This document shows, piece by piece, positions 3,285-38,297 of a stretch of 64,000 nucleotides of DNA. The notes beneath the pieces were generated by a model. The model was not told where the DNA came from and did no database searches. It was given only the letters and a program-made list of their open reading frames with translations. Location of the stretch: positions 62,001-126,000 of IMG/VR virus record IMGVR_UViG_3300046653_000093, one strand, 5' to 3'. Each line of letters begins with the position of its first letter. The stretch's first letter is position 1. A program made the position numbers and the translations under genes.

Positions 3285-3357
3285 GCGGGTAACTCCTCAA
3301 TGGTGAGGTGCCTCGTTGCCAACGAGGAAGCGGCCAGTTCGATCCTGGTTACCCGCT
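3285..3357 (+). tRNA. tRNA-Gly(GCC)
   Basis: GCGGGTA/TACCCGC acceptor; CCTCG-TTGCCAA-CGAGG anticodon arm; A at position 8. Confidence 0.88.
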
Positions 3358-3390
3358 CAAACAACACAACGCATATCCTGGAATTATACC

Positions 3391-4305
3391 ATGGATTCCA
3401 ATAAGCTCCTTAAACGCTGGGCATCTTCAAATAGAGATATCAATTCTCAATTGGTAGTTTCTGAAAATCTATTAGATGGTTTCTTTGGTACCAAAGTTGC
3501 TGCTGAATCTATGGATGATGAAGCCTGTAAGATTCTATCAGCCTACGTGGCGTTCACCAGAGCGCTCTACTTAGTACATCAACAGAATCATTGGGACGCC
3601 CAAGCATATGGAGATCACTTACTCTTTCAACGACTATACGAAGGGGCACAAGAACTAGCAGACGACGCGGCTGAGCGTGTAAAGGGTCTGTGTGGTGACG
3701 TTATTTTTGAAGGTGAAGAGGCCATCACAAAGAAGTTTGAACCAAGTATCAAGACACTAAGCTCACTTCTAGAATCCTCGTTGGAGATTGAACGCGCATT
3801 CCAGGATGTATGTCAAAACACCTATGATGCCATGAAGAAAAAAGATATGATGACTCTTGGGCTTGATGATCTTCTTATGTCACAAGCCAGTCAAGGTGAA
3901 GTACATATTTACCTTCTGCAGCAGGCTTTAAAGGGACTAGGAGAAGATATGAGTAGTGTAGCTGATAATGCTAAAGAGATTCTTGAAAAGACCGAGAGTT
4001 TTAGGGATATTTTGGTGGTGGCCGGCAGGAAGCGCAAGCCAGAATATAAGCCAAAGGACATCATCGAGTATATCGAAGCTGCCCTCAAGGTTCGTCCACA
4101 TGAAGAAGTTTTCGCTTATATCAAGGGATTGGAAGAAGCCCTGCTAGATCAGGTCATCAACATCTTGATGAAAACTAACCCTGCTTTGTTGAAGAAGATC
4201 TTTGTTAGCAGCATCGCAAAGCCTGAAGTTGAAATTGAAGAAAAGATTGAATCTCCTGAGCTGCCAGGCTTGGAAGATGCGCAGAAGAGTGTTGTCCTGT
4301 TGTAA
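3391..4305 (+). CDS. Dps/ferritin-like protein with C-terminal extension
   Basis: HQQNHW...YGDHLLFQRLYE...DDAAER ferroxidase-type pattern; start moved to ATG 3391. Confidence 0.7.
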   Translation: MDSNKLLKRWASSNRDINSQLVVSENLLDGFFGTKVAAESMDDEACKILSAYVAFTRALYLVHQQNHWDAQAYGDHLLFQRLYEGAQELADDAAERVKGLCGDVIFEGEEAITKKFEPSIKTLSSLLESSLEIERAFQDVCQNTYDAMKKKDMMTLGLDDLLMSQASQGEVHIYLLQQALKGLGEDMSSVADNAKEILEKTESFRDILVVAGRKRKPEYKPKDIIEYIEAALKVRPHEEVFAYIKGLEEALLDQVINILMKTNPALLKKIFVSSIAKPEVEIEEKIESPELPGLEDAQKSVVLL

Positions 4306-4335
4306 TAGAAAAGAGGTAGTTGTTATGCTTTAGTT

Positions 4336-4569
4336 ATGCAAACAACCAACAATTACGTTCCGACAATTATAGAACGCAGCGCCCGTCGAGCTACCCGCCG
4401 TATCTGCGGGGGTGATAGAGCTTTGCGTTACTTTAAAAAATCATCACATCGTTCTTATCGAAGAATGATGAACCAACAACTCAGCGACATTACGTCTGGT
4501 TACATCGACGTGGAAGATTACAACGATGAACCCGGTCATTGCAAATGCACCAGCTGGGATATTTGGTAG
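4336..4569 (+). CDS. Hypothetical basic protein
   Basis: ORF with upstream GAGG. Confidence 0.5.
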   Translation: MQTTNNYVPTIIERSARRATRRICGGDRALRYFKKSSHRSYRRMMNQQLSDITSGYIDVEDYNDEPGHCKCTSWDIW

Positions 4570-4659
4570 TTGATTGTATTACCTATTAATTGGCAACAGG
4601 TGATATTTCCCTATTATTTATAGGGTTTCAATAAAATTCAAAAATTACAGGGAGGTTAT

Positions 4660-5745
4660 ATGTCCACATCATTTTCTAGACTTATCACAAGTGTAGTTGT
4701 ATTCATGGCGCTTTCCTGTGGCAGCAAAGGGCAAGAGAGCGGCAATGGAAATACTGGAGGATCTGGTTACGTAATTCAAACTGGCGGAACCGGATCTGAT
4801 ATTGATGGAGGCTCTAATGGAGGTGGAACAACCTGTGCTCAGCAACAAGTCCCACTAAAAGTATTGCCTCCAGACATCTTGATAATTCAAGACAGATCTC
4901 AGTCGATGACTGATAACTCCAACGATAAAACCTGTACTGGTGGGTGCGGAGCGGCATCAAAATGGGCACAGGTAACCACCGCTATCGAGGATGTAGTTAA
5001 CTCTACCCAAAATTCTGTAAATTGGGGACTGTTCTATTTCAGCAATGGAGTTACCGAATGTGGAGTTAATACAACACCAGCTGTGTCTGTATCTCTAGGC
5101 AATGCCAGTCAGATTGTTACTTCTCTAACGGCAAATTCTCCAAGTGGCGCAACCCCAACAACTGCAACTGTAAATAATGCAGTTGCCTATATGCAGACAC
5201 TTACAGATCCTAATCCAAAGTATCTTTTGCTCGCAACAGATGGAGAACCAAACTGCCTTGGTGGAAATGCAAACAACAAAGACATTGCTGGGGCTACCGC
5301 AGCAATTGATAATGCAAAGTCTCTGGGCTTCCCCGTATTCGTTGTGGGTATTGGTAATGTCACTACAGCAACCTCAACACTAAATGGAATGGCTAACGCT
5401 GGTGGAAAAGCTCAAGCGGGCACCACAGCTTATTATGCGGTTACTGATACTGCGAGTCTTGAAACGGCCTTGACCAATATTGTAGGTATGGTATCTTCAT
5501 GTACCATCTCATTGCAAAATGTACCAAGTGGTCAATGGACAATTGCTATTTGGGCAACCGATTCTTCTGGTAAAACAATTCAGATCCAAAATAGCGCATC
5601 AGATGGTTGGGCCTATACTGACACAAACAAGTCGAGCATTGCACTGGTTGGACCAATATGTGATAACCTAAAGAATGGTACATATTCAAATATTCAGTTT
5701 GTTTATACTTGCCAAGATCAGGTTATTAATCCACCAGTGAACTAA
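4660..5745 (+). CDS. VWA-domain lipoprotein, myxobacterial type (CglB-like)
   Basis: GGAGG RBS; signal peptide with lipobox ALSC; Gly/Thr/Ser linker; MIDAS DRSQS, GATPT and TDGEPN; many Cys. Confidence 0.85.
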   Translation: MSTSFSRLITSVVVFMALSCGSKGQESGNGNTGGSGYVIQTGGTGSDIDGGSNGGGTTCAQQQVPLKVLPPDILIIQDRSQSMTDNSNDKTCTGGCGAASKWAQVTTAIEDVVNSTQNSVNWGLFYFSNGVTECGVNTTPAVSVSLGNASQIVTSLTANSPSGATPTTATVNNAVAYMQTLTDPNPKYLLLATDGEPNCLGGNANNKDIAGATAAIDNAKSLGFPVFVVGIGNVTTATSTLNGMANAGGKAQAGTTAYYAVTDTASLETALTNIVGMVSSCTISLQNVPSGQWTIAIWATDSSGKTIQIQNSASDGWAYTDTNKSSIALVGPICDNLKNGTYSNIQFVYTCQDQVINPPVN

Positions 5746-5746
5746 A

Positions 5747-5914
5747 GTGCCCAGACATATTCAAGAAAATCAATTATTATTAGCTAAAGAGAAAGATGTA
5801 GATAGGTTAGCTCAATATTTAGGTATTGATACAACAGGTTTATCAAAAGAAGATATAGCAAGTATTGTTGCTAGAAAAATTCAATTCTATACTGAGCCTG
5901 TTAATTACTATTGA
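5747..5914 (+). CDS. Small hypothetical protein (55 aa, GTG start)
   Basis: Open frame VPRHIQENQLLLAKEKDVDRLAQYLGID... filling the gap before tRNA-Ser. Confidence 0.45.
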   Translation: MPRHIQENQLLLAKEKDVDRLAQYLGIDTTGLSKEDIASIVARKIQFYTEPVNYY

Positions 5915-5915
5915 T

Positions 5916-5998
5916 GGAAAGACAAGCCAATTGGCGATGGCATCAATTTCGAAAATTGACGAGCGCAAGCCTTGGGGATTCGAATTCCTCTCTTTCCG
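5916..5998 (+). tRNA. tRNA-Ser(CGA)
   Basis: GGAAAGA/TCTTTCC acceptor, G73, TCAAT-TTCGAAA-ATTGA anticodon arm, long variable arm. Confidence 0.88.
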
Positions 5999-6011
5999 CA
6001 AAAATTATTAT

Positions 6012-6094
6012 GGTAGGACAATCCAATTGGTGATGGAACCTGTTTTGAAAACAGTCGAGCGCAAGCCTTGGGGATTCGAATTCCTCTCCTACCG
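6012..6094 (+). tRNA. tRNA-Ser(TGA)
   Basis: GGTAGGA/TCCTACC acceptor, G73, loop TTTGAAA; 3' half nearly identical to tRNA-Ser(CGA). Confidence 0.88.
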
Positions 6095-6098
6095 CAGA

Positions 6099-6401
6099 AT
6101 GAGTAGATACACAGAAATTGCTAAGCGTCTCCAAAGCGGAGAAACTGTCACGTATAAAGAGTTCGGTAATTCAATGTTACCAAAGATGAAAAGTGGCGTG
6201 AAGGTAAGTGTCCGCCCCTGTAAATTAGAAGATTGTAATGTTGGTGATATTGTCCTATCTAAAGTACATGGAGCCCATTATTTGCACTATGTCAAGGCTG
6301 TAGCCTCTGATGGTAAGGTTCAGATTGGAAATGCCCATGGACATATTAATGGATGGACAAGAACTGTCTTTGGTAAATTAGACTCCTTTGAAAATCCATA
6401 G
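6099..6401 (+). CDS. S24/S26-family peptidase-like protein
   Basis: GNSMLP serine motif, VGDIVL and GHINGW; true start is ATG 6099. Confidence 0.7.
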   Translation: MSRYTEIAKRLQSGETVTYKEFGNSMLPKMKSGVKVSVRPCKLEDCNVGDIVLSKVHGAHYLHYVKAVASDGKVQIGNAHGHINGWTRTVFGKLDSFENP

Positions 6402-6463
6402 TCGAGAAACGCGAAGTTCACGGCTATAAATTCAGCTAATAATTAAGAATAGATTTAATACCA

Positions 6464-6913
6464 AGATGCTTTACATAGGTAAAGTAAACCACATCGGTTC
6501 AGCCCCGCCGCCTTAGTTGGCCGTGGGGCTTTTGGGGTAGGTGCTCAATACTCAGATGGTACGAGAGCCACACCTGGATCCATTAGGCAGCGGTGACCAT
6601 GACGCAGGGATAGACCGAATTCGATGACAAGCGGATATTACAGCTAGTCTGGCATTGGAAAGACAATTGACAGCTCTGAGAAAGATCAGAGATCGAAGGT
6701 AAGCGGATTGCAGCTCCCTGGAATCTGGGAAGACAGATGACGGCCGGAAAGACAGCAAAGTCGATGAGTAAAGCGGACATGTATAAGCAGCTTCCCGACA
6801 ATTCGGATAGACGATTGACAGCTGGAATTAGACAGCAAATCTCGATGATAAGCGGAGCAAATTTATACAGCTACAGACAGCGGGAAAGACAGCTGACGGC
6901 GGGAACAGACCGC
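6464..6913 (+). ncRNA. Candidate large structured ncRNA upstream of tRNA-Ser(GGA)
   Basis: GC-richer than its flanks, no credible ORF, many stems; strand inferred from the flanking + strand tRNAs. Confidence 0.6.
6600..6913 (+). repeat. Tandem array of four 68-81 nt units plus one partial unit, each with two GAAAGA-type hairpins
   Basis: Units start at 6621, 6693, 6761 and 6842; shared TCGA(T)GA..AAGCGGA..CAGCT..stem-GRWAGA-stem-GACR-stem-GAAAGA-like-stem. Confidence 0.85.
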
Positions 6914-6918
6914 ATTAT

Positions 6919-7003
6919 GGAGAGTCAATCCGATTGGCGACGGAACCTGCTTGGAAAGTAGACGAGCGTAACAGCCTTGTGAGTTCGAATCTCACACTCT
7001 CCG
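6919..7003 (+). tRNA. tRNA-Ser(GGA)
   Basis: GGAGAGT/ACTCTCC acceptor, G73, loop TTGGAAA, GTGAG-TTCGAAT-CTCAC T-arm. Confidence 0.9.
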
Positions 7004-7008
7004 CAAAG

Positions 7009-7455
7009 ATGAATGTTAACCAAAAAGGCGTGGTTGGTTTGGTTAAGGTAATATCCGATTTAGTAAGTAGAGGATATGAAGTATTCACGCCAATTTCTGA
7101 TTTTTGCCCAGTTGATATTATTGTGGCAGATAGTAAAATGAACCTTAGGAGGATACAGGTAAAATACCGTGAACATGACAACAGGAATAAGAATGCAATA
7201 GTTGTACAACTTGACTCAATAGTAAATGGGAAAAGAGTTCCAGTTGATGTTTCGCTAATTGATGGGTGGGCAATATATTTCCCTGAAACTAATGAAATTT
7301 ACTACGTTCCCAAAAGTGAAGTGCAGGGCAGGAGTATTTGGCTATGCATTAGGGAGTATAAATTAAGAAGAAACAAATTAGCAAGTAAGTTTCTTGATCC
7401 TGATAGAATTTTTGGAGAGGCAATCCAACAGCTGGCGATGGAATCTGGTTGCTAA
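7009..7455 (+). CDS. PD-(D/E)XK endonuclease (group I intron-associated/homing type)
   Basis: KG...DLVSRGYEVFTPISDFCPVDII...RIQVKY pattern; start at ATG 7009. Confidence 0.8.
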   Translation: MNVNQKGVVGLVKVISDLVSRGYEVFTPISDFCPVDIIVADSKMNLRRIQVKYREHDNRNKNAIVVQLDSIVNGKRVPVDVSLIDGWAIYFPETNEIYYVPKSEVQGRSIWLCIREYKLRRNKLASKFLDPDRIFGEAIQQLAMESGC

Positions 7456-7503
7456 CCAGACGAGTTCGAAAGGGCCTTGCGAGTTCGACCCTCGCCCTCT
7501 CCG
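7414..7503 (+). tRNA. tRNA-Ser(GCT)
   Basis: GGAGAGG/CCTCTCC acceptor, G73, TCTGG-TTGCTAA-CCAGA anticodon arm, long variable arm. Confidence 0.9.
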
Positions 7504-7517
7504 CAATATGAGTACCT

Positions 7518-8018
7518 ATGAAAAAAGATACCTTCTACGATCAATATCCACTTGTATTTCCCACACGAGAACCTGAACAAGGTTTTCATTGTGGCAAGGG
7601 ATGGTATCAACTTCTGGATTGCCTATTCGAAGTAATCCAAAAACACCTTGAGAAGCTTGCAGAGCCGCCTCCGTTCCGCATTACTTACATCAAAGAGAAG
7701 TATGGCACGGTGCGCATCGGCTACGAGCACGCCACAGACTACATCAAGGAAACCCTCATCCAAGCCGAAGAGATGAGCGGACACATTTGCGAAACATGCG
7801 GCGAGTATGGCAAGCTTCGTGACTCCGCGCTTTGGATCAAGGTTCGCTGCGATGATTGCGAAGAGAAACATTTCGCATATCAAAACGCACCATTGTCTCC
7901 AGAGTCTCAAGCGGCGCTGGATGAGGGGCTACGTAGCGCCAAGGCTGACATCGAAGCTGGGAAGCCCCCGATTGATCTCGGGAGCTTCGCTCAGTACGCT
8001 GATGACGATGAAGAGTAG
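7518..8018 (+). CDS. Conserved phage hypothetical protein
   Basis: CGKGW...IKEKYGTVR...ICETCG...C pattern common in phage ORFs. Confidence 0.6.
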   Translation: MKKDTFYDQYPLVFPTREPEQGFHCGKGWYQLLDCLFEVIQKHLEKLAEPPPFRITYIKEKYGTVRIGYEHATDYIKETLIQAEEMSGHICETCGEYGKLRDSALWIKVRCDDCEEKHFAYQNAPLSPESQAALDEGLRSAKADIEAGKPPIDLGSFAQYADDDEE

Positions 8019-8027
8019 GTGTTACTC

Positions 8028-8618
8028 TTATAGTATCACCATAGTCTCTCCGCTCGGTGCAACAAACCAATCTTTCGTCAGCTTGTCTCGAAAGATTAAC
8101 CAATCAGTAGATAAGATCTTATCATCTACAATTTCGCACCTAAGCCTTTCTTGAATTCGCTTTAAGTTCTTATAATATCTCTGCTGATTGTTTCCGTAAA
8201 AATTACCTAGCACATATGCGTGCTTATCTGTCCATAGGTGCCATGACCCAAAACAAGCGGCCACGTCACCCTTTTCTTTTCGGAATTTTCTTGTCGGAAT
8301 TGGATCGCCTTCTTTGACCGTTTTGCGAAATTCTTCTAGAAAGCTAGGATAACGATCTAGAATTTGTTCATTTGTCAGGTTTATAGATGGGAATCCTGTG
8401 AATAAACAAGACATCAAGCTGCCATCTTCCCATATAGCCCTATCATGCTTGAAAATCTCAACGTCATACTTACCACTTGAGAACATAGGATAGACCCGAA
8501 TATGGGCGCTTCTTCTGCTCTTCCACTTACCCTTCGGCTTGATATCAGGAATATCAATTCCGGCAAAAATATCAAAGTCATCATCGCTTCGGACTTCTCC
8601 AAAAATATCTAGTTCCAT
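8028..8618 (-). CDS. Hypothetical protein
   Basis: 196 aa ORF. Confidence 0.55.
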   Translation of the reverse strand: MELDIFGEVRSDDDFDIFAGIDIPDIKPKGKWKSRRSAHIRVYPMFSSGKYDVEIFKHDRAIWEDGSLMSCLFTGFPSINLTNEQILDRYPSFLEEFRKTVKEGDPIPTRKFRKEKGDVAACFGSWHLWTDKHAYVLGNFYGNNQQRYYKNLKRIQERLRCEIVDDKILSTDWLIFRDKLTKDWFVAPSGETMVIL

Positions 8619-10619: not shown

Positions 10620-10847
10620 TTATTTTTTTCTATAGATTATTCTACATTTGGTCATGTCGAATGTATCCAGCTCAACATCAACCTTATCGCCCTCAACAAC
10701 TTTTATATTATTGGTGCGCATCTTACCGGAAAGTTGTCCCATCACTTTTTTTGTATTACCGTTTTCAAGATCTATGCTAACGGCGAAGAATCCGTTACCG
10801 CAAGCTCTATCAATTATTCCGTTGAATCTTGGTTTTTCAGAAGGCAT
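10620..10847 (-). CDS. infA: Translation initiation factor IF-1
   Basis: GNGFFAV...LSGKMRTNNIKVVEGDKVDVELDTFDMTKCRIIYR. Confidence 0.92.
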   Translation of the reverse strand: MPSEKPRFNGIIDRACGNGFFAVSIDLENGNTKKVMGQLSGKMRTNNIKVVEGDKVDVELDTFDMTKCRIIYRKK

Positions 10848-29854: not shown

Positions 29855-31420
29855 CTATGATTTTTCAACAGCAAAACATAGTCTTGTCAGACTAACTTCT
29901 GGTGTGATTATATTACCACCTTGAGATTCAGCAAAGAATTCTAATGTAGCTGCTGTTAGACCTGTTATTATGACTAGTAATTCGACACCATTTGTTACAG
30001 TTGGAATTATAGTCCTTTCGGTGCTGGCTCCTGGCTGAGAGGTCTTACTTCCACCATCTATTATGTAAGATACTCTGAAATCTAATATATCAGCATTTGG
30101 TGAGTTTACATCCAAGCTCAATCTACAAATCCAAGAATTTGTAGGAACCGACTCTCCTACAATAACGCTATACGCTCCCATGCTTGCCCATGATGGAGCA
30201 TCTATTAATGTTGGTGTTGTAATTGAGTAGGATCCTGCATATTTAATATCACTATTGTCATTGCTACAATTTCCCAAAATATGGTTGAAGTATAATACCT
30301 CTACAGTATCACCTGGAATTAAAGATCCAGAAGTCAGCGTAATAGTATTTCCGACAACTATATAATCTGTCTGCTTGATTCCATCAATAAACAAAAGAAC
30401 AAAATCATTCCACGCTTCATTTGATAGTGTTAATATCATTTGACCAATCATTGTAACTGTCAATGATTCTGTAATTGGCTGCCAGATATCTCCTTCCGTA
30501 TCTGTAACAGTATAGTAGGCCTCAACTACATCGCTTGTAATTAATGAAGGAGTGCCTGTCCAAGTAAGACTTTGACCAATCACGGTGTAGCTACTTATTG
30601 GTTGTTTTAGGCCGCCAATGAATAGGGTAACAAGACCATTTTTTGGTACTAATGATAGTGTAAAGGCAGTCTGACCATTTATCAAAACTGGAAGGACTTC
30701 AAGAGTTGGCCTGTATACATTTCCTAAGTTAGTATCATGGAAAACTTCATAGAAAACTTCAAAATTATCTGATGTAGAGACGGCTTGTCCAGACCATATT
30801 AAGCTGGAACCAGATACAATGTAATCATCAACTTCTTGCTTGATTCCATCTATGAAAACCATTACTATGTGGTTGTAAGGGACAAGAGATAAAGTAAAGC
30901 TTGTCTGACCATTTGATGTGACTGGTAATGATTCTTGAATTGGCTGATAACCATCAATACATTTACCAGTACCGCCTCCACAACAAGGAATATGAACATT
31001 CACACGGCCATTTATAGCAAAGTCTATATCTTCGGTTACTGTTACTCCATCTCCGAAGAAATTGATCTGTTTAACTTGAGCATTATCAGTTACTGTTGCC
31101 GAATTGTAAAAAACTCCAATACCAATAGATGCCCAAATAGAGCAGAGCAATGCCTCCATTGCGTCTAAACGGTCTCTTACAGTTGTATAAGTTCCACTGG
31201 GCTGAATTCCCAATTCGCCTTCAACCGCCAGAATTGACTCTCTATGGCGGTTTACAACTTCAGCTTTTACCGGAGTCTGCAAGTCTACAATTACGGGCAA
31301 ACCACGGGTATCCGTAGGGCGCGGGTCATCCTGATCGCACGGATAGCGGGTATAGGTATATGCCGGATTCACCCCGCAAGGTACTGGATTACTAAAATCG
31401 CATGGGTTGATAGTTACCAT
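29855..31420 (-). CDS. Probable virion/fibre-associated protein with three beta-rich repeats
   Basis: Three copies of GQT.FTLS..P....V..FI.G.KQ...Y.V.G..L......D..E..Y. Confidence 0.55.
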   Translation of the reverse strand: MVTINPCDFSNPVPCGVNPAYTYTRYPCDQDDPRPTDTRGLPVIVDLQTPVKAEVVNRHRESILAVEGELGIQPSGTYTTVRDRLDAMEALLCSIWASIGIGVFYNSATVTDNAQVKQINFFGDGVTVTEDIDFAINGRVNVHIPCCGGGTGKCIDGYQPIQESLPVTSNGQTSFTLSLVPYNHIVMVFIDGIKQEVDDYIVSGSSLIWSGQAVSTSDNFEVFYEVFHDTNLGNVYRPTLEVLPVLINGQTAFTLSLVPKNGLVTLFIGGLKQPISSYTVIGQSLTWTGTPSLITSDVVEAYYTVTDTEGDIWQPITESLTVTMIGQMILTLSNEAWNDFVLLFIDGIKQTDYIVVGNTITLTSGSLIPGDTVEVLYFNHILGNCSNDNSDIKYAGSYSITTPTLIDAPSWASMGAYSVIVGESVPTNSWICRLSLDVNSPNADILDFRVSYIIDGGSKTSQPGASTERTIIPTVTNGVELLVIITGLTAATLEFFAESQGGNIITPEVSLTRLCFAVEKS

Positions 31421-31498
31421 TGATCCTCAAAAGCTAGCCATGGTTTCATTTTATATGGCAGATTATGTATACCCGGATCTAACGGATTAAACGAAATA

Positions 31499-31524
31499 AC
31501 CCTGGAAGTTTTCACTTCCAGGGT
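31499..31524 (-). terminator. Intrinsic terminator
   Basis: ACCCTGGAAGT-tttc-ACTTCCAGGGT 11-bp stem followed by a T-rich tract on the minus strand. Confidence 0.7.
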
Positions 31525-31549
31525 CATTTACCACAAATGTTGTCAGCAA

Positions 31550-31858
31550 TTATTCTGCTTGGAACAACGTTTTGATTTGCCGCTGAGTTACTTTGCTCGG
31601 ATTGATGCGGTAATAGAACGTCCTCCGGCTGGTCTTGCGAGCTAGGTCATCAGAGCTTTTACACTCAACCCGGAACCCACCAAATTCAGCCTTTCGCAGA
31701 TCTCGTACCCTGGCAGTTGCTGACGGAATCCTACTCAAACGAGAACGTGGGATCCATTCGCCATCAGCTGACAATAGGCGTACACCAACGCGCTGGGTGT
31801 TATTGGTTATCTTGGTCATCTTCTGAATTGCTTGGATTGTTGTCTTCAATGTTTTCAT
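31550..31858 (-). CDS. Putative winged-HTH protein
   Basis: SATARVRDLRK..FGG..V motif. Confidence 0.5.
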   Translation of the reverse strand: MKTLKTTIQAIQKMTKITNNTQRVGVRLLSADGEWIPRSRLSRIPSATARVRDLRKAEFGGFRVECKSSDDLARKTSRRTFYYRINPSKVTQRQIKTLFQAE

Positions 31859-34034: not shown

Positions 34035-34380
34035 TCCATGTATTTACGACCATCTCATAATAAAGCTTCTTGGCTAATGTTCTCGCCTTAATATCTTTTC
34101 GCATGATAAATTTAGGCTTGAACCATTGAGCTAGTTTAGTATCCTGACAATAGATTTCATATCCTCTATCACCATCTTCTATAATCTCTACTTCTAGTTC
34201 ACCAAGCAAACCACGTAGTTTTATCTTTTCTTCTACAGTTAGTAATATATCAGGCCAAATATCTTCTAGAGGAACACCTATCTGTTCTAGTATGCTTTTA
34301 ATAAAAAGGTTTCTCTCCTCTTCCTCTACAACCTTTTCGTCTCCTCTATCTAGATAAACCGACCGATTCATTACCCACAT
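34000..34380 (-). CDS. Hypothetical protein
   Basis: Coupled to the RNR stop. Confidence 0.5.
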   Translation of the reverse strand: MWVMNRSVYLDRGDEKVVEEEERNLFIKSILEQIGVPLEDIWPDILLTVEEKIKLRGLLGELEVEIIEDGDRGYEIYCQDTKLAQWFKPKFIMRKDIKARTLAKKLYYEMVVNTWSVFDQEENEND

Positions 34381-37300
34381 CCACTATATGTACACTCCTC
34401 GTTGGTACAATTACCACAGGCAGCTCCAGTCTTTCGATATGTTCGCTTGCCACAAGATGGGCACTTTTCCATAGGGACTGCGTTTTTCCTATCAAAATCT
34501 TCAATAGTAGATGTCTTAGACTCTTCCTCTTGCTGCTCTTCTGCATAAGTTCGCAAGACACGAGCAATATTAGTTGGCAAAGAGAATATATACTGTCCGC
34601 CAATCTTATCCAACTGCTCACAGATGAACATGATAGGAACACCATGCCTCAAGTTCATGCTGGTTGTTCTTGCTGTCAGCTCTAGGATTTGAAGATCTTT
34701 TTCGCTCAATCCAAAATACGGGGCAATCACCAAGACCTCATACGGCTTCTTGGTACCAGGGAAGAAGCTCACTGTAACATAAGCATTTCTCGGTTCACCA
34801 TTACCAAAATCAATTCGAATCTTGTGCGTCTCTGAATCCAGAATCTTGTCACGCTTTGGAGCAAATGCCTGACCGGGCGCATCAAAGATTGGTGTAAACC
34901 AACTAAGTACATCTTGCTTCGTATACTTGGGCAATGATATACCATCTGCCGTTTCCCAATCAAAATTGCCCTGAGCTAAACTCTTAGCCTTGGCAATCTC
35001 CTTCAATTCCTTGCTGACATCTTCCAGCTTAGAGGCGATGGCATCCCACAGATCAAATCCTTCCTTATCAAAGACTTGACTATAATGTCCGATAAGATAG
35101 TTTTCGCACTTCAGCGCCTGCTTATCGCCTGTTACCAAAACTCCATCGCGAGATCCGTCAACATAAACGGTGACTCCTTTGAGGCCATATTTCCAAGCCT
35201 CCATATAGATCTTAGAAACAACACTATTGGGAGTTCCTGCAGGTAAATTGATAGTACTACTAATCGAATGATCGATATGCTTCTGCTCAGCAGCCTGGAT
35301 CATGATTCGCTTTGTCCAGTCTACCTCATCCGAGTTAACAAAGAATTCAGGAAGTGGTGCGCTCTCATCTAGGCCGAACTTCTCTAGATATGCTCTAGCA
35401 TTGTGTGAGAACTGCTTGTACTCTTGCCATGAATCACCATTGACGTCTGTGAAGTCAACACGTACACCAACATCATTTGGATTCACCTTCTTGCGGCGAA
35501 TGAAGTAGATACGGAAGACTGGTTCAACACCCGAAGAAACATTGAAGTAAGAAAAATTGCCTAGTTTGGAAATGATAGCCACCGAACCAGTTGGGGCTTG
35601 CGTCAACATAGAAATGTTGCGCCTTCCATATATAGCCATATCAGCTAGGATGTCTGCTGGTAGGTCTTTGATGAAAGGATTGTCCTTTTCCAATTCCCAA
35701 TTGAACTCTGGGAAGGGCCCACGAATTTTTGCCAACTCTACAGATGTTCTATAGGCCGTTTCTTTGAATGTTCGGTAGATTTTATCTACCATTTCAATAG
35801 CAGCATCAGAATCATACCTAATACGAAGCTGTGCTAAAGCATCGGCTAGCCCATGAGTTCCTAAGCCAGTTCTACGACCATCACGCCCGGCATCATGAAG
35901 CTTCTGCCAGATAACAATCTCCTGATCGACATCCTCTTGGGTAGTGCCAGTGTCTTTGATAACCGTTATGATCTTCTCAATCAATTCCAATTCAAGATCA
36001 ACAAGGTTATCACCCATCCTTGCTTGAATAGCAACATCGGCAATGAAGCGATCGAAATCGAACTGGGCTGTTCCCTCAAATGGGTTGTTGACGTAATTCG
36101 TTAGATTCAAAGATATCAAACGGCAACTATCGCTTGCTGAAAGAATAATCTCTGAACATGGGTTAGTTGAAACTGACTTGAATCTTGGATAGCAATGTGC
36201 TGGTAATGTTCGTACGGCGTTATTCCAGAGAACCAAACCAGGCTCTGCTGACTTGGTTGCAGAATCAACAATAGCATCCCAAACACGGCGCGCAGAAACC
36301 TTTCGGCTGATCTTCGGCGTCTTACTTTCACAAGGCCAACGAACTTCATAATCAGTTCCATCTTCAACAGCCTTGAGGAACTCATCACTCAAGCGCAAGG
36401 AGATGTTAGCTCCTGTAACTTGAGTTAGGTCATGCTTCATGTTCGTAAACTTGAGCACATCTGGATGATGGACATCCAAAGTTATCATCAAAGCGCCACG
36501 CCTCCCGCTGTTATGAACATAAAATCCTTCGCACCAAAATAGATGTTCTTCAGGAAGCTCTAAATCGAATGTCTCTTCAACTCCGTCCTCTGTAATTGAT
36601 GATACGGTCGCCTTTATAAGCAGACCGCTCTGAGCCAGCTTTTCGCCAGCAGACTTGATCTTCAAATACGCAGTGGCCGATACAAAATGTGAGTTATCAG
36701 GTATAAAATCATATTGATTATGAGTTACGCCAAGTGACTTTGCTTTGTATGGTGTTGTATAATTGTCTCGCTTAGAAATGAAGCGTTCATATATCTTTTC
36801 TGCAGGAAAAGTACCACCATCAATACAGGCAACCAATGCCTCTTGTGCATGTGTTCCTGTAATCGCTACAGAGTATAAATCTCTCCACTCTTTTGATGTA
36901 CGATCTTCTGTGTGAATTTTACTAATAATTCCATTTGCCATCAACATTATCTGAATATCCTTGGCAAAAGAAAATGAAGTTGTTGAAAAAGAATATCCTT
37001 TTTTGGATTTACCGTTAGTTCCATCGGCGTCAAAGAAACCTGCCAAGAATGACATTTGAATCTCTGATGAGGCTTTTAATATACTAGATGGTACCCTAAT
37101 TTTGGTTGATTTTTCCTTGAGTAGTGAATTAGCCTTCAACCAATGACAAACCAACTTACTGTTAATTGTGACCTTATTAACGGCACCATCACCGGGCCTA
37201 ATTGATGCATCAATACCAAATACTCTTTTAATTATCTTACAAGCTTGTGCCTGAACCGCCGGATGTTCATGAGCACATGCTATTGAAATCAATAATGGTT

Positions 37301-38297
37301 CGTTGAATTTATCATACTCAACGCCCCCATCACCATACATTAACCCAAGGATATATGCTAAATCAGTATTTATATTACGCGGTAAATTTACATCTTCATT
37401 TAATCTATTTGAATTATTGTATTGCTTCTTTACGTATTCTGGACAAACCAGATCATCAGTTCCAACGCCAACCCTCCAAGCTCCAGGTATTAATACTACA
37501 GAGTCACCCTCTTCAAAATCACCTAGGCGCTTTTCTATCAGGACACCATCCTCTTCTGTTAAGAATAGATGATCTTCCGACGCCCGAACAGAGAAACCAT
37601 ACGATGTTTGTAGTTTGTAAATCTTCTTTGAACCATTAATGAATAAATTAGAAACCCCAATAAATCCATTCTTGGTCCATACAGAATCAATACTAGGCCT
37701 TACTTCCTCAATTGGAATTAGCCCATTTCTAGTAAGAACCCTCTCGCCTTTAGCAATACACTGTCCTATCTTTCTGGTAACTTCAGAGAAGAAATCTGCA
37801 AAGCTCCATGCTCCAGTTGTTGTGCGTGCGGCATTGTTCACCGTCATCCCATCTGGGCGCAGGGATGATAAATCAAACCCAACTCCACAGCGTCTTTTAT
37901 AGAGTTGGGCAAGATTGTGAGCGGTCCTAAAAATACCAGAAATTGAATCTTCTGGAGATGCTTCAACGACGCAGTTGGAAGCACTCATTGTTTGGTAGGG
38001 ATTTCCTACCGCCGCCATAACTGAACCTTGTGGTACAATGCGTCCAAATTGAGACATGGCATTGTAATATATAGCTGTTTGATTTGTGTTATCAATAGAA
38101 TCATCGTATCTAGTATCAATACGAGCAAACTCTGTAGCCAGCCTATTGTGCATACTCTCTGGAGTTGGTTCTACAATATCACCATCAGAATCACGCATTG
38201 CGTATTTGTTCAGGTATACGCTGGCTGATATCTCCTCTCCGTTGAAGTAAGCAAGTGCTAGTTTATGGGCATCTTCGTATGAATACTTTTCCGACAT
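34371..38297 (-). CDS. nrdJ: Class II (B12-dependent) ribonucleotide reductase, intein-containing
   Basis: SNC, GRRGALM, TNPCSE, APTGS, SSGVEP, SSTIN, KG.T.Y.DGSR; C-terminal zinc ribbon. Confidence 0.93.
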   Translation of the reverse strand: MSEKYSYEDAHKLALAYFNGEEISASVYLNKYAMRDSDGDIVEPTPESMHNRLATEFARIDTRYDDSIDNTNQTAIYYNAMSQFGRIVPQGSVMAAVGNPYQTMSASNCVVEASPEDSISGIFRTAHNLAQLYKRRCGVGFDLSSLRPDGMTVNNAARTTTGAWSFADFFSEVTRKIGQCIAKGERVLTRNGLIPIEEVRPSIDSVWTKNGFIGVSNLFINGSKKIYKLQTSYGFSVRASEDHLFLTEEDGVLIEKRLGDFEEGDSVVLIPGAWRVGVGTDDLVCPEYVKKQYNNSNRLNEDVNLPRNINTDLAYILGLMYGDGGVEYDKFNEPLLISIACAHEHPAVQAQACKIIKRVFGIDASIRPGDGAVNKVTINSKLVCHWLKANSLLKEKSTKIRVPSSILKASSEIQMSFLAGFFDADGTNGKSKKGYSFSTTSFSFAKDIQIMLMANGIISKIHTEDRTSKEWRDLYSVAITGTHAQEALVACIDGGTFPAEKIYERFISKRDNYTTPYKAKSLGVTHNQYDFIPDNSHFVSATAYLKIKSAGEKLAQSGLLIKATVSSITEDGVEETFDLELPEEHLFWCEGFYVHNSGRRGALMITLDVHHPDVLKFTNMKHDLTQVTGANISLRLSDEFLKAVEDGTDYEVRWPCESKTPKISRKVSARRVWDAIVDSATKSAEPGLVLWNNAVRTLPAHCYPRFKSVSTNPCSEIILSASDSCRLISLNLTNYVNNPFEGTAQFDFDRFIADVAIQARMGDNLVDLELELIEKIITVIKDTGTTQEDVDQEIVIWQKLHDAGRDGRRTGLGTHGLADALAQLRIRYDSDAAIEMVDKIYRTFKETAYRTSVELAKIRGPFPEFNWELEKDNPFIKDLPADILADMAIYGRRNISMLTQAPTGSVAIISKLGNFSYFNVSSGVEPVFRIYFIRRKKVNPNDVGVRVDFTDVNGDSWQEYKQFSHNARAYLEKFGLDESAPLPEFFVNSDEVDWTKRIMIQAAEQKHIDHSISSTINLPAGTPNSVVSKIYMEAWKYGLKGVTVYVDGSRDGVLVTGDKQALKCENYLIGHYSQVFDKEGFDLWDAIASKLEDVSKELKEIAKAKSLAQGNFDWETADGISLPKYTKQDVLSWFTPIFDAPGQAFAPKRDKILDSETHKIRIDFGNGEPRNAYVTVSFFPGTKKPYEVLVIAPYFGLSEKDLQILELTARTTSMNLRHGVPIMFICEQLDKIGGQYIFSLPTNIARVLRTYAEEQQEEESKTSTIEDFDRKNAVPMEKCPSCGKRTYRKTGAACGNCTNEECTYSGCG
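36510..37760 (-). mobile_element. Intein (417 aa) with LAGLIDADG endonuclease in NrdJ
   Basis: GQ|CIAKGERV...SEDHLF...LGLMYGDG...FLAGFFDADG...YVHN|SGRRG. Confidence 0.92.

What the first reader, a model, noticed from the sequence alone, without database searches (positions are those of the whole stretch)
4660..5745. Phage-encoded myxobacterial-type VWA lipoprotein (CglB-like)
Seen: lipobox, Gly/Thr linker, intact MIDAS and a Cys-rich C-terminus, with a strong RBS and AT-rich phage-like codons, so it is not a fresh insertion. Established: Myxococcus CglB is an outer-membrane VWA lipoprotein adhesin for gliding and is shared between cells by outer membrane exchange. Inference: points to a Myxococcota host; the phage may alter motility or adhesion, mask a receptor, or spread the protein to neighbouring cells.
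Basis: partly seen in the sequence, partly recalled or inferred. Interest (0 to 1): 0.62.

Follow-up and report, generated by a model that had tools for sequence, protein, structure and literature searches.

The report
Huge phage carries myxobacterial adhesin lipoprotein
A 392-kb phage from peat carries an intact, long-kept copy of a sticky surface lipoprotein otherwise found only in myxobacteria; this points to its likely host group and suggests the virus changes what infected cells stick to.

Summary
The ORF at 4660-5745 is real. It encodes a 361-aa protein with a lipoprotein signal (Cys20), a 38-residue Gly-rich disordered tether, a VWA domain with a complete MIDAS (D78, S80, S82, T165, D194), and a small C-terminal beta domain. 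Eight conserved Cys lie in the mature part.

The window belongs to a 391,957-bp tailed huge phage from peat (terminase, portal and sheath found; no integrase found).

The protein belongs to a large family found here only in Myxococcota/Polyangia MAGs, with up to about five full-length copies per genome. The phage copies form one clade nested inside that bacterial radiation. They sit at the same locus in five related phage contigs, are under purifying selection (dN/dS about 0.12), and match the phage's base composition. The gene was therefore captured long ago and is not a fresh insertion or a chimera.

It is only a distant relative of CglB: 41.8 bits against a 200-bit cut-off. The architecture is the same, but it is not the orthologue.

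Its closest cellular relatives (65-73% identity) lie in three mid-GC Myxococcota MAGs. A second phage adhesin-type lipoprotein finds its best matches among the five MAGs searched in two of those three, which makes that lineage the likely host.

The effect on the infected cell is inferred, not shown. Supplying a host-type adhesin is the favoured reading; receptor masking is the main rival.

The parts
4580..4617 (+). Conserved upstream block (4580-4611) overlapping the best sigma-70-like promoter match of the region: TTGGCA, 16 nt, TATTAT at 4590-4617, 43 nt before the ATG.
   Evidence: The promoter scan gives 10 of 12 matches, the joint-best score in 3300-8300. The block is 27 of 32 identical in a related phage whose synonymous sites are saturated. 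It is unique in the 392-kb genome. A shared 10-mer lies at a similar offset upstream of the G001 orthologue. No function has been shown.
4650..4655 (+). Shine-Dalgarno sequence GGGAGG.
   Evidence: Read directly from the sequence. It is conserved as GGAG in related phage contigs.
4660..5745 (+). CDS of the 361-aa VWA lipoprotein (P0001), stop codon included.
4660..4719 (+). Type II (lipoprotein) signal peptide, residues 1-19, plus the lipid-modified Cys20.
   Evidence: Sequence. Cys20 is invariant in alignments A1 and A2. Position +2 is Gly and +7 is Glu, so neither the Lys(+2) nor the Ala(+7) inner-membrane retention signal reported for M. xanthus is present (PMC5562445).
4720..4833 (+). Gly-rich disordered tether, residues 21-58.
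   Evidence: pLDDT below 50. Composition and length: 35-42 residues in the phage clade against a median of 62 in the rest of the family.
4834..5496 (+). VWA domain, residues about 59-279. MIDAS codons: D78 (4891-4893), S80 (4897-4899), S82 (4903-4905), T165 (5152-5154), D194 (5239-5241).
   Evidence: Pfam PF00092 over residues 72-270. pLDDT is mostly above 90. Foldseek finds adhesin VWA domains: SpaC, integrin beta I, PilB, TRAP, CMG2. Conservation.
5497..5742 (+). Small C-terminal beta-strand domain, residues 280-361, with conserved C281, C334 and C351.
   Evidence: Strands 282-351 with pLDDT 80-94. A weak match to positions 305-389 of the CglB model (17.7 bits, E 2.5e-4).
5747..5914 (+). Conserved 55-aa ORF abutting the VWA stop codon. 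No signal peptide; possibly helix-turn-helix-like.
   Evidence: Present right after the VWA gene in five phage contigs. The four copies with DNA on hand are 47-70% identical. No Pfam or PADLOC hit. Any link to the lipoprotein is unknown.
3391..4305 (+). Upstream DUF5856/ferritin-like gene, the conserved left neighbour in the phage lineage.
2839..3358 (+). Four tRNA-Gly genes. Together with the tRNAs at 5916-5998, 6012-6094 and 6919-7003, they frame a tRNA island around the VWA gene.

Best explanation
SHOWN:
- The gene is an intact, conserved gene of a tailed huge phage from peat. No integrase was found, so the phage is probably virulent.
- It encodes a two-domain VWA protein with a lipoprotein signal and a complete MIDAS.
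- It belongs to a large, multi-copy family of Myxococcota (Polyangia) lipoproteins. That family shares CglB's architecture, but the protein is not the CglB orthologue.
- The phage copies form one clade nested inside the bacterial radiation. They are kept at one locus and are under purifying selection.

INFERRED, mechanism: During infection the gene is transcribed from its own conserved upstream element. The product is exported by Sec, lipidated at Cys20 and cleaved by signal peptidase II. It is then sorted to the outer membrane, where it hangs on a roughly 38-residue flexible tether. The MIDAS-bound metal ion then binds a ligand, as in other VWA adhesins.

INFERRED, role: The phage supplies a host-type adhesin, together with a second host-type adhesin lipoprotein (choice-of-anchor A). 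This keeps or shifts the adhesion of the infected cell to substrate or neighbours while the phage replicates.

INFERRED, host: The host is a mid-GC Polyangia-like lineage, represented by MAGs G001-G003.
For: Phage identity; no integrase.

Same gene and same flanks in independent samples and in related phages.

Family and taxonomy. Each of the five MAGs tested has 5-21 MYXO-CTERM matches over the cut-off, against none in 14 control genomes.

Nested phage clade: SH-aLRT 97-100 on the enclosing nodes.

Amelioration and selection.

Features and fold.

Own conserved upstream block.

Second adhesin-type lipoprotein: PF20597, E 4e-58. Its best matches among the five MAGs searched are in G002 (61%) and G001 (58%), two of the three MAGs that hold the closest VWA orthologues. 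In G001 such a gene directly precedes a VWA lipoprotein gene.

Outer-membrane sorting rule: PMC5562445.
Against: - There is no expression evidence. The metatranscriptome contigs laid on 3400-8200 do not cover the gene. Contigs cannot show absence.
- There is no direct host link such as a spacer, prophage or Hi-C contact. Phage GC (43%) is 10-15 points below that of the proposed hosts. The large terminase is only about 25% identical to those of cultured phages.
- Lipidation, outer-membrane location and surface exposure are predictions only.
- The ligand is unknown.
- The closest bacterial copies are AT-shifted against their flanks and lie near IS elements. Some transfers may therefore have run from phage to bacterium, and the bacterial copies may not be core adhesins.
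- Known phage outer-membrane lipoproteins act in exclusion rather than adhesion. That favours the rival below.
Confidence: 0.55

Rival explanations
1. Receptor masking or superinfection exclusion. The outer-membrane lipoprotein binds or replaces the host surface protein or glycan that this phage, or competing phages, use as receptor. Infected cells and their debris then no longer adsorb phage, as with the T5 Llp and Cor lipoproteins.
For: Phage-encoded outer-membrane lipoproteins with this role are established (reviews found; T5 Llp from my own knowledge). The phage looks virulent, as T5 is. The host family is multi-copy and variable, and its closest members lie beside IS elements, as expected of surface proteins in an arms race. 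The phage clade has a shortened tether.
Against: There is no similarity to any PHROG exclusion or lipoprotein family and no PADLOC hit. Known exclusion lipoproteins are small and are not copies of host adhesins. The full MIDAS and all eight Cys are kept under purifying selection, as in the host proteins. That suggests the native binding activity is what is retained.
Confidence: 0.25
2. A true CglB substitute. The protein docks on the Glt outer-membrane platform and changes or sustains gliding motility of the infected cell.
For: It has the same order of parts as CglB: lipobox Cys20, VWA with MIDAS, small beta domain, disulfides (PMC9946355). There are weak but ordered matches to the CglB model at positions 154-211 and 305-389.
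Against: It scores 41.8 bits against the curated cut-off of 200. None of the five MAGs holding the closest relatives, and none of the roughly 400 genomes sampled from their phylum, has an over-cut-off CglB. Some paralogues sit beside sugar-sensing kinases and uronate or sugar-transport genes rather than motility genes. It has 9 Cys against 17 in CglB.
Confidence: 0.07
3. Spread to neighbours. As an outer-membrane lipoprotein, the product is passed to kin cells by TraAB outer-membrane exchange and conditions them for, or against, infection.
For: In M. xanthus an outer-membrane lipoprotein signal is enough for transfer, and lipoprotein toxins encoded on prophage-like Mx-alpha units are exchange cargo (PMC5562445). 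P0001 lacks the inner-membrane retention signals.
Against: TraA and TraB were not looked for in the candidate hosts. Outer-membrane exchange is documented only in some myxobacteria. Nothing in the sequence is specific to exchange.
Confidence: 0.05
4. Artefact or passenger: bacterial DNA mis-assembled into a viral contig, or a decaying gene with no role for the phage.
For: The closest relatives are bacterial. IMG/VR contigs can be chimeric.
Against: The identical gene with identical phage flanks occurs on 8 contigs from separate samples and on a second IMG/VR contig. The locus is syntenic in phages that are only 71-85% identical in this protein. GC and GC3 match the phage. dN/dS is about 0.12 and all key residues are kept.
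Confidence: 0.02

Closest known systems
CglB, the gliding-motility adhesin of Myxococcus xanthus (NCBIfam NF033757; Islam et al. 2023, PMC9946355)
   Same: Both are outer-membrane-type lipoproteins with the lipid Cys at position 20. Both have an integrin-like VWA domain with a full D-x-S-x-S...T...D MIDAS, a small beta domain and conserved disulfide Cys. Both are confined to Myxococcota. There is a weak, colinear HMM match.
   Different: The score is far below the family cut-off (41.8 against 200 bits). The protein is 361 aa against 416, has 9 Cys against 17, and has a shorter stretch between the D-x-S-x-S motif and the MIDAS Thr. It belongs to a separate, much larger paralogous family. No link to Glt genes was seen. 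It is carried by a phage.
Unnamed Polyangia VWA-lipoprotein family (e.g. HXJ22736.1, 'vWA domain-containing protein [Polyangia bacterium]')
   Same: Full-length homology at 45-73% identity. The lipobox, tether, MIDAS, eight Cys and C-terminal domain are the same. This is the family the phage gene belongs to.
   Different: The phage clade has a shorter tether (35-42 against a median of 62 residues), lacks a 6-8-residue loop next to the MIDAS that many members have, and has phage-like base composition. No member has a tested function.
VWA adhesins of pili and cells: SpaC (6M3Y), S. sanguinis PilB (7B7P), integrin beta I domains, Plasmodium TRAP, CMG2
   Same: These are the best structural matches of the model (Foldseek E 1e-11 to 5e-8). 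All use MIDAS-dependent ligand binding.
   Different: Sequence identity is only 10-17% and TM-score 0.4-0.45 over the whole model. Their anchoring differs (pilus or transmembrane, not lipid) and so do their partner domains.
Phage outer-membrane lipoproteins that block receptors (T5 Llp, Cor)
   Same: They are phage-encoded, lipid-anchored in the outer membrane and made during infection. This is a plausible functional analogy.
   Different: There is no sequence or size similarity and no PHROG hit. Those proteins are small and are not derived from host adhesins.
SitA lipoprotein toxins on Mx-alpha prophage-like elements (PMC5562445)
   Same: They are myxobacterial lipoproteins with outer-membrane sorting signals encoded on phage-derived elements. 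They show that such cargo reaches the outer membrane and can be exchanged.
   Different: SitA proteins carry toxin domains and have immunity partners. P0001 has an adhesin domain, no toxin domain and no immunity-like neighbour.
Viral VWA proteins in BFVD (giant viruses, Gordonia, Rhodobacter and haloarchaeal phages)
   Same: They share the generic VWA fold.
   Different: TM-score is at most 0.45 and identity 10-18%. None shows the same lipoprotein-plus-C-domain build; many are virion or CobT-like proteins.

Membership tests
CglB (NCBIfam NF033757, equivalog) | Score at or above the curated cut-off of 200 bits | tested here: not met
   41.8 bits, E 6.9e-11. There are two short pieces, at model positions 154-211 and 305-389.
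CglB (NCBIfam NF033757, equivalog) | Lipoprotein signal with a lipobox Cys (C20 in CglB) | tested here: met
   A-L-S-C20 after R7 and a hydrophobic run. Invariant in 66 relatives.
CglB (NCBIfam NF033757, equivalog) | VWA domain with a complete MIDAS (D56, S58, S60, T182, D211 in CglB) | tested here: met
   D78, S80, S82, T165 and D194.
CglB (NCBIfam NF033757, equivalog) | Second small beta-jellyroll domain | tested here: inconclusive
   A beta-strand domain at residues 280-361 is modelled with pLDDT 80-94. It matches CglB model positions 305-389 weakly. Its fold was not compared on its own.
CglB (NCBIfam NF033757, equivalog) | Many disulfide Cys (17 of 416) | tested here: not met
   9 of 361, of which 8 in the mature protein are conserved.
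CglB (NCBIfam NF033757, equivalog) | Co-occurrence with the Agl-Glt gliding machinery; needed for gliding | not tested
   Glt and Agl genes were not searched for in the candidate hosts. No over-cut-off CglB was found in the genomes searched.
Pfam VWA (PF00092) | Score above the gathering threshold | tested here: met
   45.6 bits against 23.8, residues 72-270.
Polyangia VWA-lipoprotein paralogue family (unnamed) | Full-length homology with a shared lipobox, MIDAS, eight Cys and C-terminal domain | tested here: met
   E down to 1e-199. Alignments A1 and A2. The tree places the protein inside the family.
Phage receptor-blocking lipoproteins (Llp, Cor) | Sequence membership in a known phage exclusion family | tested here: not met
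   The only PHROG hit is a chance-level one to a holin (E 0.088). No PADLOC hit.
Phage receptor-blocking lipoproteins (Llp, Cor) | Blocks adsorption or DNA entry | not testable with these tools
   This needs a host and plaque or adsorption assays.
Outer spanin (Rz1-type lysis lipoprotein) | Small lipoprotein paired with an inner spanin in a lysis cassette | tested here: not met
   It is 361 aa with a folded VWA domain. Its neighbours are tRNAs, a DUF5856 gene and a small cytoplasmic ORF.
Outer-membrane-exchange cargo (M. xanthus type) | Outer-membrane sorting signal: no Lys at +2 and no Ala at +7 | tested here: met
   Position +2 is Gly and +7 is Glu. Rule taken from PMC5562445.
Outer-membrane-exchange cargo (M. 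xanthus type) | Host has TraA and TraB | not tested
   No model accession was at hand, so this was not searched.

The most novel reading that the evidence does not exclude
A virulent huge phage of uncultured peat Polyangia carries a kit of host-type surface adhesin lipoproteins: this VWA protein, a choice-of-anchor A protein and several more. With it the phage reprograms the adhesion or social contacts of infected cells. For example, it could hold them in contact with susceptible kin, or pass the proteins to neighbours by outer-membrane exchange. The gene also shuttles between phage and host chromosomes. That would be virus-driven manipulation of myxobacterial social surface behaviour.
Probability: 0.12. 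Interest if true: 0.8.

Novelty: new variant of a known kind. Interest (0 to 1): 0.5.

Why it matters
It assigns a likely host group to a 392-kb peat phage that has no cultured relatives: its large terminase is only about 25% identical to those of known phages. The proposed hosts are uncultured mid-GC Polyangia-like Myxococcota.

It also shows that a CglB-type adhesin architecture has been kept in a phage lineage for a long time. None of the papers retrieved in the searches here describes a phage-borne VWA adhesin lipoprotein.

If the protein changes adhesion or phage adsorption of infected cells, it would be a new kind of phage auxiliary gene, one that acts on surface behaviour rather than metabolism. 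It would also give a handle on a large, unstudied family of myxobacterial surface lipoproteins.

Tried and rejected
- Host from phage relatives. Megablast of 25 kb found only a tRNA-like match. Large-terminase tblastn gave at most about 25% identity, mostly to Bacillus phages. Neither is informative.
- Host from the upstream GT51 transglycosylase. It is a core gene of a clade of huge phages with contigs up to 512 kb, not a recent host gene.
- Fetching a true CglB for direct alignment. No over-cut-off match was found in five MAGs or in samples of 151 and 401 genomes from their phylum, and none in the control genomes. The CglB comparison therefore rests on the HMM and on the paper.
- Expression. 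Contigs of four metatranscriptome runs do not cover the gene. This is not evidence of silence.
- The upstream block as a general phage promoter. It is unique in the genome.
- Sequence search of PDB with the family profile: only a marginal collagen VI VWA hit.
- IMG/VR scan: only a second contig of the same phage.
- PADLOC and PHROG gave no meaningful hit.
- Conserved operon partner in bacteria. Neighbourhoods differ by subfamily: sugar-sensing hybrid kinase, glucuronate isomerase/MFS, or unknown proteins. The closest bacterial clade showed no same-strand neighbour that looks like a partner.

Full report
THE OBJECT

The ORF at window 4660-5745 (+) is open and encodes 361 residues. It has:
- a lipoprotein signal: R7, a hydrophobic run, then A-L-S-C20;
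- a 38-residue Gly-rich stretch (15 Gly, 5 Ser, 5 Thr) that AlphaFold leaves disordered;
- a VWA domain (Pfam PF00092, 45.6 bits against 23.8) with a complete MIDAS: D78, S80, S82, T165, D194;
- a small beta-strand domain at residues 280-361.

The mature protein has eight Cys, all conserved across the family. 'Cys-rich C-terminus' is therefore an overstatement, since only three of them lie in the last 81 residues. A GGGAGG Shine-Dalgarno sits four bases before the ATG.

The model has mean pLDDT 84, and above 90 through most of the VWA core. Its best solved-structure matches are adhesin VWA domains: SpaC, integrin beta I domains, S. sanguinis PilB, TRAP and CMG2. Viral VWA proteins in BFVD match only generically.

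THE CARRIER

The window is bases 219,445-283,444 of a 391,957-bp IMG/VR virus record rated 91% complete. The record encodes a large terminase (phrog_675, E 2.5e-55), a portal (E 1.3e-46) and a weak tail-sheath match. The window itself holds ribonucleotide reductase, a DnaB-type helicase, other helicases and a CCA-adding enzyme, an IF1-like gene and many tRNAs. No tyrosine integrase or large serine recombinase was found. This is a tailed, probably virulent huge phage.

The identical protein, with identical flanks, occurs on eight contigs from several JGI and SRA samples and on a second IMG/VR contig. The runs that hold the stretch are peat and permafrost metagenomes. A chimeric assembly is excluded.

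THE FAMILY AND ITS RANGE

A word-indexed search found 778 homologues. An exhaustive search of 1.84 billion cluster representatives found 290 at E <= 1e-30 and 1,962 at E <= 1e-10, most of them aligned over the full length.

A pattern scan of 185,579 species genomes returned 70 loci. Every one lies in a MAG labelled Polyangia, Polyangiaceae, Myxococcales, Myxococcota, Deltaproteobacteria or just 'proteobacterium'. Five of these MAGs, including the vaguely labelled ones, each carry 5-21 MYXO-CTERM matches over the cut-off, against none in 14 control genomes. The nearest ESM Atlas clusters, by features and by structure, are all listed as 'commonest Myxococcota'. A single genome holds up to about five full-length copies; one search lists 1-9 matches per genome, some of them partial pieces. 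The pattern scan cannot see very distant relatives, so 'restricted to Myxococcota' holds only for this family as defined here.

RELATION TO CglB

The curated CglB model gives 41.8 bits against a cut-off of 200. There are two colinear pieces, at model positions 154-211 and 305-389.

According to PMC9946355, CglB is 416 aa with lipobox C20, MIDAS D56/S58/S60/T182/D211, a small beta-jellyroll domain and 17 Cys. The phage protein shares that build but is not the orthologue.

No over-cut-off CglB was found in the five MAGs, nor in samples of 151 and 401 genomes from their phylum. That means 'not found in those searched', not 'absent'.

Some bacterial paralogues lie next to a sugar-binding hybrid histidine kinase, or to glucuronate isomerase and MFS transporter genes. 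Nothing links the family to gliding genes.

HISTORY OF THE PHAGE COPY

Relatives at 71-87% identity (P0002, P0007, P0008, P0014) lie on contigs with the same phage gene order: HD protein, DUF5856 protein, VWA gene, then a small conserved ORF. Relatives at 63-70% identity (P0015, P0017, P0020 and loci L002-L004) lie in bacterial contexts.

In a maximum-likelihood tree the phage sequences form one clade (SH-aLRT 87). Its sister is a bacterial clade (99), and both are nested (97, 100, 99) inside the Polyangia radiation.

The gene's GC (43.5%) and GC3 (0.32) match the phage. Between two phage lineages synonymous sites are saturated (dS about 1.7) while dN/dS is about 0.12. All key residues are retained. 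The phage clade has a shortened tether, 35-42 residues against a family median of 62. The gene was therefore captured once, long ago, and is maintained by selection.

One complication: the closest bacterial copies are AT-shifted against their flanks. The G002 copy has GC3 0.35 against about 0.6 nearby, and it lies at a contig end beside IS110 and rve genes. Some transfers may therefore have run from phage back to bacterium.

HOST

Only three of the species genomes scanned hold copies that are 65-73% identical. These are G001-G003, genomes or partial genomes of 2.3-8 Mb with 52-58% GC.

A second predicted phage lipoprotein (G000 30,503-31,834) has a choice-of-anchor A / pAdhesive_15 domain (E 4e-58). 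Among the five MAGs searched, its best matches are in G002 (61%) and G001 (58%), ahead of G005 (43%) and G004 (30%); G003 gave no match. In G001 such a gene is directly followed by a VWA lipoprotein gene.

Two independent genes thus point to the same lineage. This is inference from gene sharing only. The large terminase and the GT51 protein gave no host signal.

REGULATION AND EXPRESSION

The joint-best sigma-70-like match in 3300-8300 lies 43 nt before the ATG. It overlaps a 32-nt block that is 27 of 32 identical in a related phage despite saturated synonymous sites. The block is unique in the genome. A 10-mer from it recurs at a similar offset upstream of the G001 orthologue. This suggests the gene travels with its own control element.

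Contigs of four metatranscriptome runs do not cover the gene. Expression remains unshown.

MECHANISM

The likeliest course is export, lipidation at Cys20, sorting to the outer membrane, and metal-dependent ligand binding at the end of a flexible tether. Outer-membrane sorting is predicted because the protein lacks Lys at +2 and Ala at +7, the retention signals reported for M. xanthus (PMC5562445).

The phage keeps the host protein's binding apparatus intact and also carries a second host-type adhesin lipoprotein. I therefore favour supply or alteration of host adhesion during infection (0.55, counting the molecular identity).

Receptor masking of the Llp/Cor kind is the main rival (0.25). A true CglB role (0.07), spread by outer-membrane exchange (0.05) and an artefact (0.02) are less likely.

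NOVELTY

Phage genes derived from hosts are known, and so are VWA adhesin lipoproteins. None of the papers retrieved describes a phage-borne member of this adhesin class. I rate it a new variant of a known kind, with interest 0.5.

Noticed in passing
window 6551-6854: Contigs from three metatranscriptome runs match this stretch at 100% identity, with contig depth up to 126. A fourth run gives only short pieces inside it, with a joint. The stretch has no called ORF, no Rfam family, no tandem repeat and no unusual fold energy (z 0.14). It lies between tRNA genes. It may be an abundant unannotated phage RNA.
   Followed up: partly
window 5916-5998, 6012-6094, 6919-7003, 7414-7502: Rfam finds three more tRNAs that ARAGORN missed, plus a tRNA-Sec-like match below the gathering score. 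ORFs 5865-6401 and 6934-7455 overlap them and may be spurious. The VWA gene sits inside a tRNA island.
   Followed up: partly
G000:C1:30503-31834 (locus L097; outside the window): A second predicted phage lipoprotein has a choice-of-anchor A / pAdhesive_15 adhesive domain (E 4e-58). Among the five MAGs searched, its best matches lie in G002 and G001, which also hold two of the closest VWA orthologues. In G001 (L103) such a gene directly precedes a VWA lipoprotein gene.
   Followed up: partly
G000:C1, e.g. 69962-71638, 109541-113021, 184327-185166, 191315-192178: A rough lipobox scan gives about ten further lipoprotein candidates in the phage genome, including a cluster at 109.5-113 kb. One has an FGE-sulfatase-like domain.
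   Followed up: no
G000:C1:214171-215895 (about 3.5 kb before the window; L072 68-1792): A 574-aa GT51 transglycosylase-domain protein is conserved at 40-83% identity on many contigs of 200-512 kb. It looks like a core gene of a clade of huge phages. One such 463-kb contig is labelled Pacearchaeota in NCBI.
   Followed up: partly
window 5747-5914: A 55-aa ORF abuts the VWA stop codon. A small ORF sits in the same position in all five phage contigs, and the four copies with DNA on hand are 47-70% identical. It has no signal peptide and carries a helix-turn-helix-like motif.
   Followed up: partly
window 34371-38297 (-): The ribonucleotide reductase large subunit is split in its profile match (residues 27-170 and 596-1305) by a segment that matches an endonuclease family (302-485). 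This suggests an intein or homing-endonuclease insert.
   Followed up: no
L108 17515-18567 (G002), L004, L078, L105: The bacterial orthologues closest to the phage gene are AT-shifted against their flanks. They lie near IS110 or rve transposase genes or at a contig end, which hints at transfer from phage to bacterium.
   Followed up: partly
L005, L008 (downstream of the match); L048 and relatives: Subfamilies of the bacterial paralogues have conserved neighbours. One is a periplasmic sugar-binding hybrid histidine kinase. Others are glucuronate isomerase, an MFS transporter and a lectin-like protein. This hints at a role in glycan binding for some members.
   Followed up: partly
window 10620-10847 (-): An IF1-like gene (Pfam eIF-1a, 75 aa) is conserved in related phage contigs.
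   Followed up: no
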